Below, one piece after another: positions 11,543 to 31,777 of a stretch of 64,000 nucleotides of DNA; the stretch's first letter is position 1; each line of letters begins with the position of its first letter. The stretch is taken from positions 124,001-188,000 of the IMG/VR virus record IMGVR_UViG_3300032242_002041. The stretch is one strand, 5' to 3'. The translations under genes were made by a program, and so were the position numbers. The notes below the pieces were generated by a model. That model ran no database searches. It saw only the letters and a program-made list of their open reading frames with translations, and had not been told where the DNA came from.

Positions 11543-11618
11543 TGGTGCCCCCACCATGATTCGAACACGGGACAACCGGTTTACAAAACCGGTGCTCTAC
11601 CAGCTGAGCTATAGGGGC
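11543..11618 (-). tRNA. tRNA-Thr(TGT)
   Basis: Cloverleaf GCCCCTA...TGGGGGC-ACCA; anticodon loop TT-TGT-AA; GTTCGAATC T-loop. Confidence 0.95.
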
Positions 11619-11626
11619 ATACTACT

Positions 11627-11842
11627 TCATTCCGTTACTGTTTCTACTACTGGTGCACGATAACTAGGACGACTTTTCATCACAGCGATCCTGCGTTGAA
11701 TTTTTGGTGCGGTCTTTTTACGGGCCGTGGCCAATAACTTTTCTAACTGTGCTACATTTAATGGACCCAAGCGTTCTCGACCATTTTTGGTACGCATTGG
11801 ATCTGCCCGACGACTTTTTTGATTTCCACCTTTGGCTGCCAT
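11627..11842 (-). CDS. Small basic hypothetical protein
   Basis: ORF track; SD AAGGA. Confidence 0.7.
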   Translation of the reverse strand: MAAKGGNQKSRRADPMRTKNGRERLGPLNVAQLEKLLATARKKTAPKIQRRIAVMKSRPSYRAPVVETVTE

Positions 11843-11898
11843 GTTGTTTCCTTATGTTATCTTTTACTTATTTGTAGCAATACATAAGATTAAAATTC

Positions 11899-11991
11899 TG
11901 GAGGAGGGCTAGGGATTCGAACCCTAGATGGACTGTTAAGGCCCATGTCCGCTTAGTAGGCGGATGCCTTCGACCGCTCGGCCAGCCCTCC
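11899..11991 (-). tRNA. tRNA-Ser(ACT), long variable arm
   Basis: Stem TCCGC/GCGGA with loop CT-ACT-AA; long variable arm; encoded CCA; U73. Confidence 0.85.
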
Positions 11992-11999
11992 CAAAATCG

Positions 12000-12164
12000 T
12001 TACTTGTTTAGAAATATGCCTTGTTTAAAGGCCTTAATTTTAGCGTGGGTGCTTTTGTTTGCAGCCATAATGCTACGACTGGCTTCGGCTCGTTTTTCGC
12101 TCTTGCTCCATTGTCCTGCTAGAGTGCGACTGAGTTCACTTGCTGTTTGTTGTGCTTTTGCCAT
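12000..12164 (-). CDS. Small basic hypothetical protein (54 aa)
   Basis: Manual translation MAKAQQTASELSRTLAGQWSKSEKRAEASRSIMAANKSTHAKIKAFKQGIFLNK. Confidence 0.7.
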   Translation of the reverse strand: MAKAQQTASELSRTLAGQWSKSEKRAEASRSIMAANKSTHAKIKAFKQGIFLNK

Positions 12165-12165
12165 G

Positions 12166-12393
12166 TTATTTTACCTTTGCCAAGTAGTCAATCAAACTAA
12201 CCTGCCCTGCTTGTATTTCGTAGAGTGCATCTACGCAGGTTACATAACGGGTAGTATCTTCGCGATGAATACGCTTGAGTTCACGTAGGCGTTGTGCGCC
12301 AATTAGCACCATATCATAGCGTCCGCCGCCGGCTTGTTGAACACACTTTTCCATATTGATCTCTGGTCCACGACTTGCGATTCTTGGTTTCAT
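12166..12393 (-). CDS. rpoZ: RNA polymerase omega subunit homolog
   Basis: GRYDMVLIGAQRLREL matches RpoZ (S/N)RY.LV...A.RAR.L; 75 aa. Confidence 0.75.
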   Translation of the reverse strand: MKPRIASRGPEINMEKCVQQAGGGRYDMVLIGAQRLRELKRIHREDTTRYVTCVDALYEIQAGQVSLIDYLAKVK

Positions 12394-12416
12394 GATCTCT
12401 CCTGTTTTAAAAGTAT

Positions 12417-12445
12417 ATTATACAGCATAATTTGGTAGTTGTCAA
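12417..12445 (-). promoter_or_regulatory. Sigma70-type promoter
   Basis: TTGACA-17-TATAAT. Confidence 0.9.
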
Positions 12446-13572
12446 TTGAATTCTATTGCATTGAATTTAGAAATTGCTCGATCTTGATACCATTGATATA
12501 GTGTGGTTTGAGCAACTGCAATATTCTGTCCAAAACGAGTTTTACACAACTGCCATTTTTGTTTTACATAATCCAAATCCGTTAGTAATTGGCGGTTAGT
12601 TTCGATGGCAGCAACAACACGGTCAATTGGATTGGCAATCGTGTCATAGCTGTGATCAACAATGTCGTCAAACAGGTCAAATCCAACCTGTCGTAAGTGT
12701 TCAACTGCTCCTACTCCGCTCAGTAATATGGGAAAATTGCACCCGTACACACTGTTTAAAAATTTTTCGGTAATCATAAAACTTGGAGATTCAAATGAGC
12801 TTTCAGAAACAACTTCTACAAAACTATGTTGATATCGATTGCGTAGTTTGTTATTAAAATTTGCTACATTGTCGAATATAATATTGGTGTTATAAATTTC
12901 ATAGTTGTCAGTGATCAGTTGTTGATTTTGATTTATTTTTTGGTACCCATTGGCCAATACCTGTGTAAGTTCACTGTGCCTTTCGTCAAACTGCCAAGAA
13001 ATATAATCAAGAAATTCAGACTTTGGATGTTGATCTAAATATGAAATGTCGCCGTACTGATCATAACCCATTCCAAATAGATAACTTAGCAATACAATAC
13101 GATGTGATCTAGCGTGCCTGTTTAGGCTAATAAATGTGTGAGTGGATTTAAAATTTTTGTCCAGTACTGGATTTAGTGTAGGGTAGGAGTTGGACTGATT
13201 AGTAACGTCTCCTCCCCATGGCACAAATTGTATATTGCTATTAGTTGTTTCTAAACTAGCATTTTCAAGACTGGTAAAAATAATAAATGTTTTGCGCGAA
13301 TTCCTTTGCGCTAGATTGTTTAACAAATCAATTCCAGCATTGGCTGCGTCATTCCAATAATTGTATTCAACACCAAGATTTAATAAATCCTTAATCCCAA
13401 GTATTACATTAGACTTTGTAGGTTGTAATGTAGATAAAAAGGTTTTAAATTTTTCAAGATTGCTGGTCCAAATATAATATGCTTCATAGTCGCAATCAAC
13501 TTGGGATAATACATTTTGAAATAGGTCGTAGGTAAAATTATCGCTAGGTCCTCTACTGACAGTAGTAATCAT
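12442..13572 (-). CDS. Putative glycosyltransferase (TEK motif family), paralog 2
   Basis: VVSESSF...ITEKF...FPI...GFDLFDDIVDHSYD. Confidence 0.5.
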   Translation of the reverse strand: MITTVSRGPSDNFTYDLFQNVLSQVDCDYEAYYIWTSNLEKFKTFLSTLQPTKSNVILGIKDLLNLGVEYNYWNDAANAGIDLLNNLAQRNSRKTFIIFTSLENASLETTNSNIQFVPWGGDVTNQSNSYPTLNPVLDKNFKSTHTFISLNRHARSHRIVLLSYLFGMGYDQYGDISYLDQHPKSEFLDYISWQFDERHSELTQVLANGYQKINQNQQLITDNYEIYNTNIIFDNVANFNNKLRNRYQHSFVEVVSESSFESPSFMITEKFLNSVYGCNFPILLSGVGAVEHLRQVGFDLFDDIVDHSYDTIANPIDRVVAAIETNRQLLTDLDYVKQKWQLCKTRFGQNIAVAQTTLYQWYQDRAISKFNAIEFN

Positions 13573-23090: not shown

Positions 23091-23167
23091 TGGTGCCCCT
23101 GGTAGGATTCGGACCTACAGATCCCGCCCTCTTAAAGCGGTGACTTTACCAGTTTGTCTACAGGGGT
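23091..23167 (-). tRNA. tRNA-Leu(AAG)-like, atypical (short variable loop, A1:C72 mismatch, TCCGAAT T-loop)
   Basis: Stem CCGCT/GGCGG with loop TT-AAG-AG; encoded CCA. Confidence 0.6.
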
Positions 23168-31140: not shown

Positions 31141-31261
31141 TTGATTTATTTCCTTTTAAGAATGGGCACAGATTTATGTCCCGTGAATAATATTTAGTGG
31201 GTTTTACTGATGGACAGCAAAAATGCCAACTTTTTGTTAGTTTTTGGAGTTAACGGCGTAT

Positions 31262-31288
31262 AAAAAGAAACCCGCCGAAGCGGGTTCT
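31262..31288 (-). terminator. Intrinsic terminator downstream of tmRNA
   Basis: AACCCGC-TTCG-GCGGGTT followed by TCTTTTT. Confidence 0.85.
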
Positions 31289-31289
31289 A

Positions 31290-31645
31290 CTATTTTCTGT
31301 TACGAGGTATAATTACCCTAAGCAGTGATTAAACTGCTAAAGATTGACGTTGTGCTGTACGAGCAGAGAACTTAACGTTCTTACCTGAAACAGTTACTTC
31401 GCCTGTATTTGCGTTTGCATTTACGAGATTTGCTTCTTCGACCGAGCTTCCCCAGTCCTAACGGCTTTAGCTTTGCCGATTCTCCAATAGCCCTTGTGTG
31501 CCAATCGATACCAAATTCATCCCCACCGAAGCATACTGTTTTCACCCTCCGAACTTCACGCTGGGTAACGCATCACAATACACTTCGGTGGAGATGTCGG
31601 GGCTTGAACCCGAGTCTTGCTCACCCTACTTCTATCTTCAACGAA
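31290..31645 (-). ncRNA. ssrA: Circularly permuted (two-piece) tmRNA
   Basis: Acceptor piece GACTCGGGTTCAAGCCCCGACATCTCCA (to 31589) precedes 5' piece GGGGATG (31524); intervening self-complementary stem; tag ORF 31418-31329 ANANTGEVTVSGKNVKFSARTAQRQSLAV; outer ends approximate. Confidence 0.85.
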
Positions 31646-31777
31646 TTTTATTTTGTGGCATACTTTTTTAAGTCGACCACTACTAAACCCTTTATGTTGG
31701 ACAAGAGTTCGACCAACTTTTACTCTAAGACACAGTTTGCCTTCACTACGAAGGAATTACAACAATTCTTTTAAAAC

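What the first reader, a model, noticed from the sequence alone, without database searches (positions are those of the whole stretch)
11899..11991. tRNA-Ser with the near-forbidden ACT anticodon
Seen: intact Ser-type cloverleaf with long variable arm, loop CU-ACU-AA and U73. Known: bacteria generally have A34 only in tRNA-Arg(ACG), where TadA converts it to inosine. An I34 ICU tRNA could misread AGA (Arg), so the AGY box normally uses GCU. Inference: the phage uses unmodified A34 to speed AGU decoding in its AT-rich genes, to evade an anticodon nuclease targeting Ser(GCU), or to cause deliberate Ser-for-Arg mistranslation in the host.
Basis: partly seen in the sequence, partly recalled or inferred. 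Interest (0 to 1): 0.6.

Follow-up and report, generated by a model that had tools for sequence, protein, structure and literature searches.

The report
Phage serine tRNA with forbidden anticodon
A giant freshwater phage carries an intact serine tRNA whose anticodon begins with adenosine, a type that reviews call absent from all life; the same tRNA is conserved in more than fifty related phage contigs and arose at least three times, so it is a selected gene and not an error.

Summary
Window 11899-11991 (-) encodes a 93-nt class II tRNA-Ser with anticodon loop CUACUAA (anticodon ACU), U73 and an encoded CCA (ARAGORN; Rfam 52.4 bits).

It is not an assembly error or recent drift:
- The source run's contig matches exactly, and no variant is listed at the anticodon in four runs.
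- 54 other viral contigs carry a Ser(ACT) tRNA.
- Across 25 distinct sequences, 99.8% of stem cells pair and 18 of 24 pairs show compensatory changes.
- With the anticodon left open, 26 of 26 close relatives read ACT.
- More distant relatives have GCT at the same place. A tree of 104 tRNA bodies forces at least 3 G34/A34 switches.

In cellular genomes the pattern is very rare: 11 hits across 185,579 species, mostly accessory copies in Polynucleobacter.

Best explanation (inferred): host SerRS charges the tRNA, A34 stays unmodified because TadA needs G36, and the tRNA reads AGU only. AGU is the phage's commonest serine codon (40%). Published E. coli experiments with ACU anticodons fit this.

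Expression, charging and modification state are untested.

This is a new variant of a known kind: a split-box A34 tRNA retained over evolutionary time, against the "prohibited anticodon" rule.

The parts
11899..11991 (-). tRNA-Ser with anticodon ACU: 93 nt, class II, long variable arm, U73 at 11902, encoded CCA at 11899-11901
   Evidence: ARAGORN; Rfam tRNA 52.4 bits; covariation among 25 homologues; exact match to the run contig
11955..11957 (-). anticodon A34 C35 U36 (plus strand AGT; A34 is the complement of T at 11957)
   Evidence: sequence; no variant listed in 4 runs; ACT in 26 of 26 contigs found with the anticodon left open
12417..12445 (-). promoter-like site with a perfect sigma-70 consensus (TTGACA, 17 nt, TATAAT). 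It lies upstream of two small ORFs and the tRNA and is a possible start of a shared transcript.
   Evidence: consensus scan, 12 of 12 matches; function not shown
12166..12393 (-). 75-aa ORF (weak RNA polymerase omega/Rpb6 likeness), a conserved upstream neighbour of the tRNA cluster
   Evidence: Pfam PF01192 E 9e-4, below cut-off; homologues in 31 of 48 ACT loci; 378 viral stretches encode a relative
12000..12164 (-). 54-aa ORF directly upstream of the tRNA-Ser, conserved neighbour, no family match
   Evidence: homologues in 23 of 48 ACT loci at 50-80% identity; no Pfam or PHROG match
11627..11842 (-). 71-aa basic ORF between tRNA-Ser and tRNA-Thr, conserved neighbour, no family match
   Evidence: homologues in 12 ACT loci; no Pfam or PHROG match
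11543..11618 (-). tRNA-Thr(UGU), the usual partner of Ser(ACU) in related contigs; it reads ACA, the phage's commonest Thr codon
   Evidence: ARAGORN and Rfam 67.4 bits; a Thr(tgt) gene is called in 24 of the 44 loci; ACA is 40% of Thr codons

Best explanation
This is a working serine tRNA whose first anticodon base is a plain adenosine. Shown: the gene is intact. Its cloverleaf has been kept by compensatory changes across a diverged group of freshwater phages with contigs up to about 357 kb. The ACT anticodon is fixed in all close relatives. The G34-to-A34 switch (or its reverse) happened at least three times on different tRNA-Ser bodies. Inferred: (1) Host SerRS charges it, because bacterial SerRS reads the long variable arm and acceptor stem, not the anticodon. 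(2) Host TadA does not convert A34 to inosine, because TadA needs U33-A34-C35-G36 and this loop has U36. (3) With A34 unmodified, the tRNA reads AGU by three Watson-Crick pairs and leaves AGC to the host's tRNA-Ser(GCU) and AGA/AGG to tRNA-Arg. It therefore supplies a dedicated decoder for the serine codon the phage uses most. AGU is 40% of serine codons and 26 per 1000 codons, about twice the rate in the candidate host genus. This parallels the neighbouring tRNA-Thr(UGU) and ACA. Whether A34 is favoured over G34, or merely costs nothing in a phage that can rely on the host's GCU tRNA, is not settled. The repeated origin and long retention argue for an advantage.
For: Gene and structure. Not an error: exact contig match and no variant listed at the anticodon. 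Spread: 44 viral contigs with a loose pattern, 4 more from open-anticodon scans and 6 more from a search that did not use the tRNA sequence. Selection on structure: 99.8% of cells paired, 18 of 24 pairs with double changes, 0 of 500 shuffles as high. Anticodon kept: 26 of 26 ACT with NNN left open. Recurrence: the tree of 104 unique AGY-type tRNA-Ser bodies needs 7 changes, well-supported branches force at least 3, and the shuffled mean is 25; L246 has the same body as GCT tRNAs with exactly G34 to A. Addition rather than replacement: L001 and L226 carry both Ser(GCT) and Ser(ACT). Codons: AGT 1849 against AGC 852; AGT 26.3 per 1000 against 12.6 in Polynucleobacter-genus loci; within the related phage group, ACT loci have AGT/AGY 0.66 against 0.56 and AGC 11.5 against 15.2 per 1000 (nominal p 0.004 and 0.002). 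TadA specificity: UACG core, strict G36 (PMC11472039 and PMC10586758). E. coli experiments: an ACU anticodon read AGU at 9.4%, AGC and AGA below detection, AGG 0.36%, with no inosine (PMC11066159). Ser-tRNA(ACU) in its native body improved growth and had a low estimated mistranslation risk, unlike most other split-box ANN tRNAs (bioRxiv 10.64898/2026.05.15.725136).
Against: There are no data on expression, processing, charging or modification; no RNA run holds the stretch. The window's copy has U73 where 21 of 25 homologues have G73, which may weaken serylation. The host is not identified; the Burkholderiales/Polynucleobacter link rests on shared tRNA sequence and tmRNA-tag likeness. Unrelated phages of the same GC content that carry Ser(GCT) use AGT just as much (32% against 33% of Ser codons, p 0.53), so codon demand alone does not explain A34 over G34. 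The decoding and TadA data come from E. coli and partly from an archaeal tRNA body. The p-values ignore relatedness of the contigs.
Confidence: 0.62

Rival explanations
1. A34 is deaminated to inosine by host TadA or by a phage enzyme. The tRNA would then read AGU and AGC (and AGA), replacing rather than complementing tRNA-Ser(GCU).
For: The loop CUACUAA differs from the TadA substrate loop CUACGAA at position 36 only. Some bacterial TadA enzymes have widened their range to Leu(AAG). The phage encodes one uncharacterised CDA-fold protein, L045:1222-1860.
Against: TadA shows a strict preference for G36 and a UACG/UAMG core. An ACU anticodon was not deaminated in E. coli. The phage has no TadA-type (PF14437) gene in the 66% of the genome held. 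Its CDA-fold protein has the long PC-x10-C spacing, and its best, weak match is the RibD deaminase. Inosine would put serine at AGA, which the phage uses 566 times. L001 and L226 keep a separate Ser(GCT).
Confidence: 0.08
2. The main benefit is escape from a host tRNA-cleaving defence or toxin that recognises G34 of tRNA-Ser(GCU). The phage copy still reads AGU but survives cleavage.
For: Phage tRNAs with anticodon-loop changes that block nucleases are documented (PMC10264068). Repeated independent G34-to-A34 switches would suit an arms race. Codon usage alone does not separate ACT phages from GC-matched GCT phages.
Against: No nuclease against tRNA-Ser(GCU) is known; that paper lists Ser(GCU) as the serine tRNA not targeted. 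Two phages carry GCT and ACT side by side. No defence gene was linked to the locus here.
Confidence: 0.12
3. A34 carries another, unknown modification, made by host or phage, that tunes pairing.
For: The modification state is wholly untested. The phage has unassigned enzymes, including the CDA-fold protein.
Against: No such A34 modification is known in bacteria. Nothing in the locus points to one. The plain-A reading already fits the E. coli data.
Confidence: 0.05
4. The tRNA serves deliberate Ser-for-Arg mistranslation of host proteins, or it is a non-functional relic or assembly error.
For: A34 can weakly misread AGG: 0.36% in E. coli.
Against: Misreading would hit the phage's own 680 AGR codons. 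The cloverleaf is under strong purifying selection, and the anticodon is fixed in 26 of 26 close relatives. Reads agree with the assembly.
Confidence: 0.03

Closest known systems
Bacterial and phage tRNA-Ser(GCU), the normal AGY decoder
   Same: Class II cloverleaf with long variable arm, 3-bp D stem, G1-C72/G2-C71/A3-U70 and loop YU-NCU-AA. On the tree the ACT tRNAs sit among GCT tRNAs, and one (L246) differs from its GCT kin at position 34 only.
   Different: A34 instead of G34, so Watson-Crick pairing with AGU and no G:C pair with AGC. The window's copy also has U73 instead of G73.
tRNA-Arg(ACG) with TadA (I34), the one near-universal A34 tRNA of bacteria
   Same: Genomically encoded A34; the loop is identical at six of seven positions (CUAC-AA).
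   Different: U36 instead of G36, which TadA requires. The tRNA serves a split codon box, where inosine would cross into arginine codons. Serine identity.
Natural unmodified or expanded A34 tRNAs of four-codon boxes: Mycoplasma tRNA-Thr(AGU) and Firmicute tRNA-Leu(AAG)
   Same: ANN anticodons retained over evolutionary time in AT-rich genomes.
   Different: Those serve family boxes, where misreading is harmless. The 2026 survey found split-box ANN tRNAs only sporadically (5 of 132 ANN genes at high score) and always beside the GNN tRNA. Here a split-box ANN is kept across a clade, usually as the only AGY tRNA seen in the held part of the phage contig (GCT alongside only in L001 and L226).
Engineered Ser-tRNA(ACU) and orthogonal tRNA(ACU) in E. 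coli (Raval et al. 2026 preprint; Schmitt et al. 2024)
   Same: Same anticodon. Shown to be matured, active, not deaminated and AGU-specific, and neutral or beneficial on overexpression.
   Different: Laboratory constructs in E. coli. The present tRNA is a natural gene of uncultured phages and has no experimental data.
Phage tRNAs that evade anticodon nucleases through loop changes (van den Berg et al. 2023)
   Same: A phage-encoded tRNA that differs from the host isoacceptor within the anticodon loop.
   Different: There the changes flank the anticodon and keep the decoding. Here the wobble base itself changes, and no nuclease for this tRNA is known.

Membership tests
tRNA (Rfam RF00005) | Cloverleaf scoring above the family's gathering score | tested here: met
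   52.4 bits against 29, full model 1-71; ARAGORN call; 24 stem pairs 99.8% paired with covariation
Bacterial class II tRNA-Ser | Long variable arm with its own stem | tested here: met
   21-nt arm with a 6-bp stem; four arm pairs covary in 25 sequences
Bacterial class II tRNA-Ser | Acceptor and D-stem identity pairs of E. coli tRNA-Ser (G2-C71, A3-U70, C11-G24; the identity set is recalled from established knowledge) | tested here: met
   Present in the window's sequence. G1-C72, G2-C71 and the three D-stem pairs, which include C11-G24, are invariant in 25 homologues; A3-U70 is kept in 24 of 25.
Bacterial class II tRNA-Ser | Discriminator G73 | tested here: not met
   U73 in the window (coordinate 11902); G73 in 21 of the 25 aligned sequences. 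This is a minor identity element in E. coli as far as I recall, so it lowers but does not remove the case for serine identity.
Bacterial class II tRNA-Ser | Aminoacylation with serine by SerRS | not testable with these tools
   Needs a charging assay. No phage SerRS N-domain is found in the held genome, so host SerRS would have to act.
AGY-decoding tRNA-Ser(GCU) isoacceptor | G34 C35 U36 anticodon | tested here: not met
   A34, fixed in close relatives
AGY-decoding tRNA-Ser(GCU) isoacceptor | Body homologous to GCU-type tRNA-Ser genes | tested here: met
   ACT tRNAs nest among GCT tRNAs on the tree built with position 34 removed. One subfamily shares its anticodon arm with UGA/CGA-type tRNA-Ser instead.
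TadA substrates (I34 tRNAs of bacteria) | U33-A34-C35-G36 in a 7-nt loop on a stem | tested here: not met
   The loop has U36; the G36 requirement is taken from PMC10586758 and PMC11472039
Nuclease-evading phage tRNAs | Loop change at a position that a known host nuclease needs for cleavage | tested here: inconclusive
   Position 34 differs from the host-type GCU tRNA, but no nuclease that cuts tRNA-Ser(GCU) is on record

The most novel reading that the evidence does not exclude
[quoted passage not shown] It arose at least three times and has been kept through deep divergence. It gives the phage an AGU-only decoder that no cell supplies. This would be the first natural case of a split-box ANN anticodon retained over evolutionary time, and a natural test bed for why such anticodons are otherwise missing from life.
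Probability: 0.5. Interest if true: 0.8.

Novelty: new variant of a known kind. Interest (0 to 1): 0.7.

Why it matters
Reviews state that ANN anticodons of split codon boxes are missing in all domains and in phages, and call them prohibited (PMC8007984). A 2026 study found that such tRNAs work in E. coli and called their absence a sharpened paradox. It singled out Ser(ACU) as the one that helps rather than harms.

Here nature supplies that very tRNA, conserved and repeatedly evolved. This turns an open question about the wobble rules into something testable on real genes with real codon usage:
- Is unmodified A34 tolerated where misreading risk is low?
- Does it speed U-ending codons?
- Why is it found in phages and not in cells?

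It also gives a marker for a large group of uncultured freshwater phages and a lead to their hosts (Polynucleobacter and kin).

Tried and rejected
- Megablast of 2 kb around the tRNA against cultured phages found no match.
- blastn of the tRNA against the same collection found only two Acidovorax phages. ACF1, the one checked, carries GCT. No cultured phage with this tRNA was found.
- Literature searches for a phage Ser(ACU) found nothing.
- No TadA-type gene (PF14437) is in the held genome. The one CDA-fold ORF looks weakly RibD-like, not TadA-like.
- No SerRS N-domain is in the held genome.
- No RNA run holds the stretch, so expression could not be checked.
- Codon usage of ACT loci against unrelated GC-matched GCT loci does not discriminate.
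- ARAGORN's Phe(AAA) calls in relatives were rejected. L008 and L014 read better as a short-arm Leu(UAA), because that register keeps one base at position 26 and a 5-nt variable loop. The 96-nt calls in L020 and L041 lack CCA and look spurious.
- The Pseudophaeobacter hit is a truncated tRNA fragment, not a gene.
- Host inference from the permuted tmRNA type failed. Polynucleobacter has a standard tmRNA and scores below the cut-off for the permuted family. Only the tag resembles that of some relatives.
- I considered that Polynucleobacter uses ACT as its core AGY tRNA and rejected it. Each of the five genomes searched also has Ser(GCT), and only 4 of 121 sampled genomes of the genus hold the ACT gene.

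Full report
**1. What is there.**
The window is bases 124001-188000 of a 228,286-bp linear IMG/VR virus record that CheckV rates about 66% complete. That implies a genome near 345 kb. GC content is about 40%. All ten tRNA genes and a permuted tmRNA of the record lie in the window, all on the minus strand.

At 11899-11991 (-) ARAGORN calls tRNA-Ser(act), and Rfam's tRNA model scores 52.4 bits against a cut-off of 29. The gene has these features:
- a 7-bp acceptor stem (G1-C72, G2-C71, A3-U70)
- a 3-bp D stem with C11-G24
- a 5-bp anticodon stem and the 7-nt loop CUACUAA
- a 21-nt variable arm with a 6-bp stem
- a standard T arm
- U73 and an encoded CCA

**2. Not an error.**
The contig of the probable source run covers 11545-13000 without a single difference. 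No alternative letter is listed at the anticodon (plus strand 11955-11957) in four metagenome runs, two of them labelled freshwater. Those runs include contigs of diverged relatives. The tool printed only its best-supported differences.

**3. Relatives.**
Three kinds of scan were run on the viral collection.
- A scan with the window's anticodon arm and the anticodon left open found four contigs, all reading ACT.
- A looser pattern (Ser-type D arm plus CTACTAA) found 44 contigs of up to 357 kb, with 23 distinct tRNA sequences counting the window's own.
- Two further open-anticodon scans gave 26 of 26 ACT for the window's subfamily. For a second subfamily they gave 10 ACT, 3 TGA, 2 CGA and no GCT.

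On an alignment of 25 distinct sequences, 99.8% of stem cells pair. Eighteen of 24 pairs show changes on both sides, no shuffle reaches this, and sliding the partners destroys it. The tRNA is under purifying selection for its fold.

The genes around it are shared by many of these contigs at 32-93% protein identity. The module reads, in order: a 75-aa omega-like ORF, a 54-aa ORF, tRNA-Ser, a 71-aa ORF, tRNA-Thr(UGU) and a 105-aa ORF. Most carriers therefore form one diverged phage lineage. The nearest cultured phages by an ATPase gene are the Pseudomonas PA5oct group (50%), Sinorhizobium Phosso (45%) and Agrobacterium Atu_ph07 (37%).

**4. A search that does not depend on the tRNA.**
I aligned the omega-like ORF and fetched 80 viral loci that encode a relative; 378 stretches exist in all. 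Among the 44 loci with an AGY-type tRNA-Ser, 22 read ACT and 22 read GCT.
- The closest relatives (79-93% protein identity) read ACT.
- The exceptions are L233, where the ACT gene of that contig lies outside the stretch fetched, and L243, which is cut short and has no tRNA-Ser.
- A sister set at 72-80% identity reads GCT at the same place.
- Distant relatives mostly read GCT.

New ACT bodies appeared in this search. L246 has the body of a GCT family and differs from it in the anticodon loop at position 34 only. L240 belongs to a third body type.

An ML tree of 104 unique AGY-type tRNA-Ser sequences, built without column 34, needs 7 changes of the label. Well-supported branches force at least 3. 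Shuffled labels need 25 on average, and 0 of 500 shuffles are as low. ACT clades of 10, 6 and 5 rows each have 95% support. The tree rests on about 90 columns, so the exact number of switches is unsure, and the root is not known.

In all, 54 viral contigs besides the window's record carry Ser(ACT).

**5. Cellular genomes.**
The same pattern over one genome for each of 185,579 species hit 11 places:
- eight loci in five Polynucleobacter species
- two uncultured betaproteobacterial MAGs
- one Succinatimonas MAG
- one truncated fragment in Pseudophaeobacter

In Polynucleobacter the gene sits with Gly(CCC) and Thr(CGT), next to panD and an Rrf2 regulator. Mobile-element genes lie nearby: a T4SS coupling protein, an HNH protein and a P63C-domain protein. 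Several copies are degraded. Each of the five genomes searched also has a normal Ser(GCT), and only 4 of 121 sampled genomes of the genus hold the ACT gene. It is therefore accessory there.

A near-identical copy on a viral-collection contig taken from an isolate genome (L029; 98% identical to one of the uncultured betaproteobacterial MAG copies, L055, and 93-97% to the Polynucleobacter copies) nests inside a phage ACT clade. The Polynucleobacter tmRNA tag ANDERFALAA resembles the tag ANDAQFALAA of two phage relatives. Freshwater Burkholderiales are thus plausible hosts, but this is inference.

**6. How it most likely works.**
Bacterial SerRS does not read the anticodon (established knowledge), and the identity pairs are present. 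The exception is G73, which is U in this copy.

TadA recognises U33-A34-C35-G36 with a strict need for G36. Natural editing sites follow UACG, or UAMG in Streptococcus pyogenes. The loop here has U36, so A34 should stay adenosine.

In E. coli an orthogonal tRNA with anticodon ACU showed no inosine. It read AGU at 9.4%, AGC and AGA below detection, and AGG at 0.36%. A 2026 preprint found that Ser-tRNA(ACU) in its native body is matured and active. Unlike most other split-box ANN tRNAs, it improved growth, and its estimated miscoding risk is low.

The phage uses AGT for 40% of its serine codons: 1849 AGT against 852 AGC, or 26.3 per 1000 codons. AGG is its rarest arginine codon. Loci of the candidate host genus use AGT at 12.6 per 1000. 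The same contrast holds for ACA, which the neighbouring tRNA-Thr(UGU) reads.

Two relatives carry Ser(GCT) and Ser(ACT) together, which fits an added AGU specialist. Within the related phage group, ACT loci use relatively more AGT and less AGC than GCT loci (nominal p-values, contigs not independent).

A perfect sigma-70 consensus lies about 430 nt upstream, before the two small ORFs. Its function is not shown.

**7. What speaks against it, and the rivals.**
- Nothing is known about expression, charging or modification.
- GC-matched unrelated phages with Ser(GCT) use AGT as much, so codon demand does not by itself explain A over G.
- Deamination to inosine is unlikely for the reasons above. 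The phage would also mistranslate its own 566 AGA codons. No TadA-type gene is present in the held genome, and the single CDA-fold ORF is weakly RibD-like.
- Escape from a nuclease is possible, but no enzyme is known that cuts tRNA-Ser(GCU).
- Deliberate mistranslation, a relic gene or an assembly error are contradicted by the conservation.

**8. Comparison with what is known, and novelty.**
A review lists split-box ANN anticodons as universally missing, and prohibited in phages too. The 2026 survey of GtRNAdb found them only sporadically, always beside the GNN tRNA. At a strict score only 5 of 132 ANN genes were of this kind, and phages were not surveyed. I found no paper that reports a phage Ser(ACU), within the limits of the held library.

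The thing itself is an ordinary kind of molecule, a tRNA-Ser. Its anticodon, its retention across a clade and its repeated origin are new. I file it as a new variant of a known kind and score interest at 0.7.

Noticed in passing
window 23091-23167 (-): A second A34 tRNA, called Leu(AAG). It is 77 nt with a short variable arm (not the class II form of bacterial tRNA-Leu), A1 opposite C72 (A1-U72 in most relatives), A73 and T-loop TCCGAAT (C at 55). The loop is UUAAGAG here but CCAAGAA, with C33, in most relatives. The family was called in at least 13 different viral contigs (19 locus calls, some of them the same contig fetched twice); a sister form reads UAA. Its amino-acid identity and function are unknown.
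   Followed up: partly
window 31238-31678 (-): A permuted (two-piece) tmRNA: Rfam RF04321, 70.5 bits. Its predicted tag of 29 residues ends in SLAV, and the tag is conserved in relatives L009, L025 and L042. Other relatives carry a short tag, ANDAQFALAA, like the ANDERFALAA of Polynucleobacter.
   Followed up: partly
window 12166-12393 (-): A 75-aa ORF with a weak match to RNA polymerase omega/Rpb6 (PF01192, E 9e-4, below cut-off). It is conserved just upstream of the tRNA cluster, and 378 viral stretches encode a relative. It may be a phage-encoded omega-like subunit.
   Followed up: partly
L045:1222-1860 (-), = G000:C1:190591-191229, just outside the window: A 212-aa CDA-fold protein (PF00383, 33.6 bits) with HAE and a PC-x10-C zinc motif. 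Its best, weak likeness is to the RibD deaminase domain, and it has no PHROG family. The substrate is unknown. It is the only deaminase-fold gene found in the held genome.
   Followed up: partly
L025:13498-13573 and L028:3905-3980: tRNA-Asn(ATT) in two related contigs (identical sequence). It has an E. coli-like tRNA-Asn body with A34 in place of G34, so it is a second split-box ANN tRNA in this phage group. Its D stem looks weak.
   Followed up: no
L052, L054, L056, L053, L051, L046 (Polynucleobacter genomes): An accessory tRNA cluster Ser(ACT)-Gly(CCC)-Thr(CGT) lies beside mobile-element genes. One genome holds up to four copies, some with broken acceptor or T stems. This pattern suggests an integration hot spot.
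   Followed up: partly
window 12417-12445 (-): A perfect sigma-70 consensus promoter (TTGACA, 17 nt, TATAAT) in a phage whose other promoters were not examined.
   Followed up: no
L226:2111-10912: A 201.7-kb related contig with 27 tRNA genes in 9 kb. These include Arg(ACG), Ser(GCT), Ser(TGA) and Ser(ACT), the last directly after Arg(TCT). Arg(TCT) also lies near Ser(ACT) in L030 and L037.
   Followed up: no
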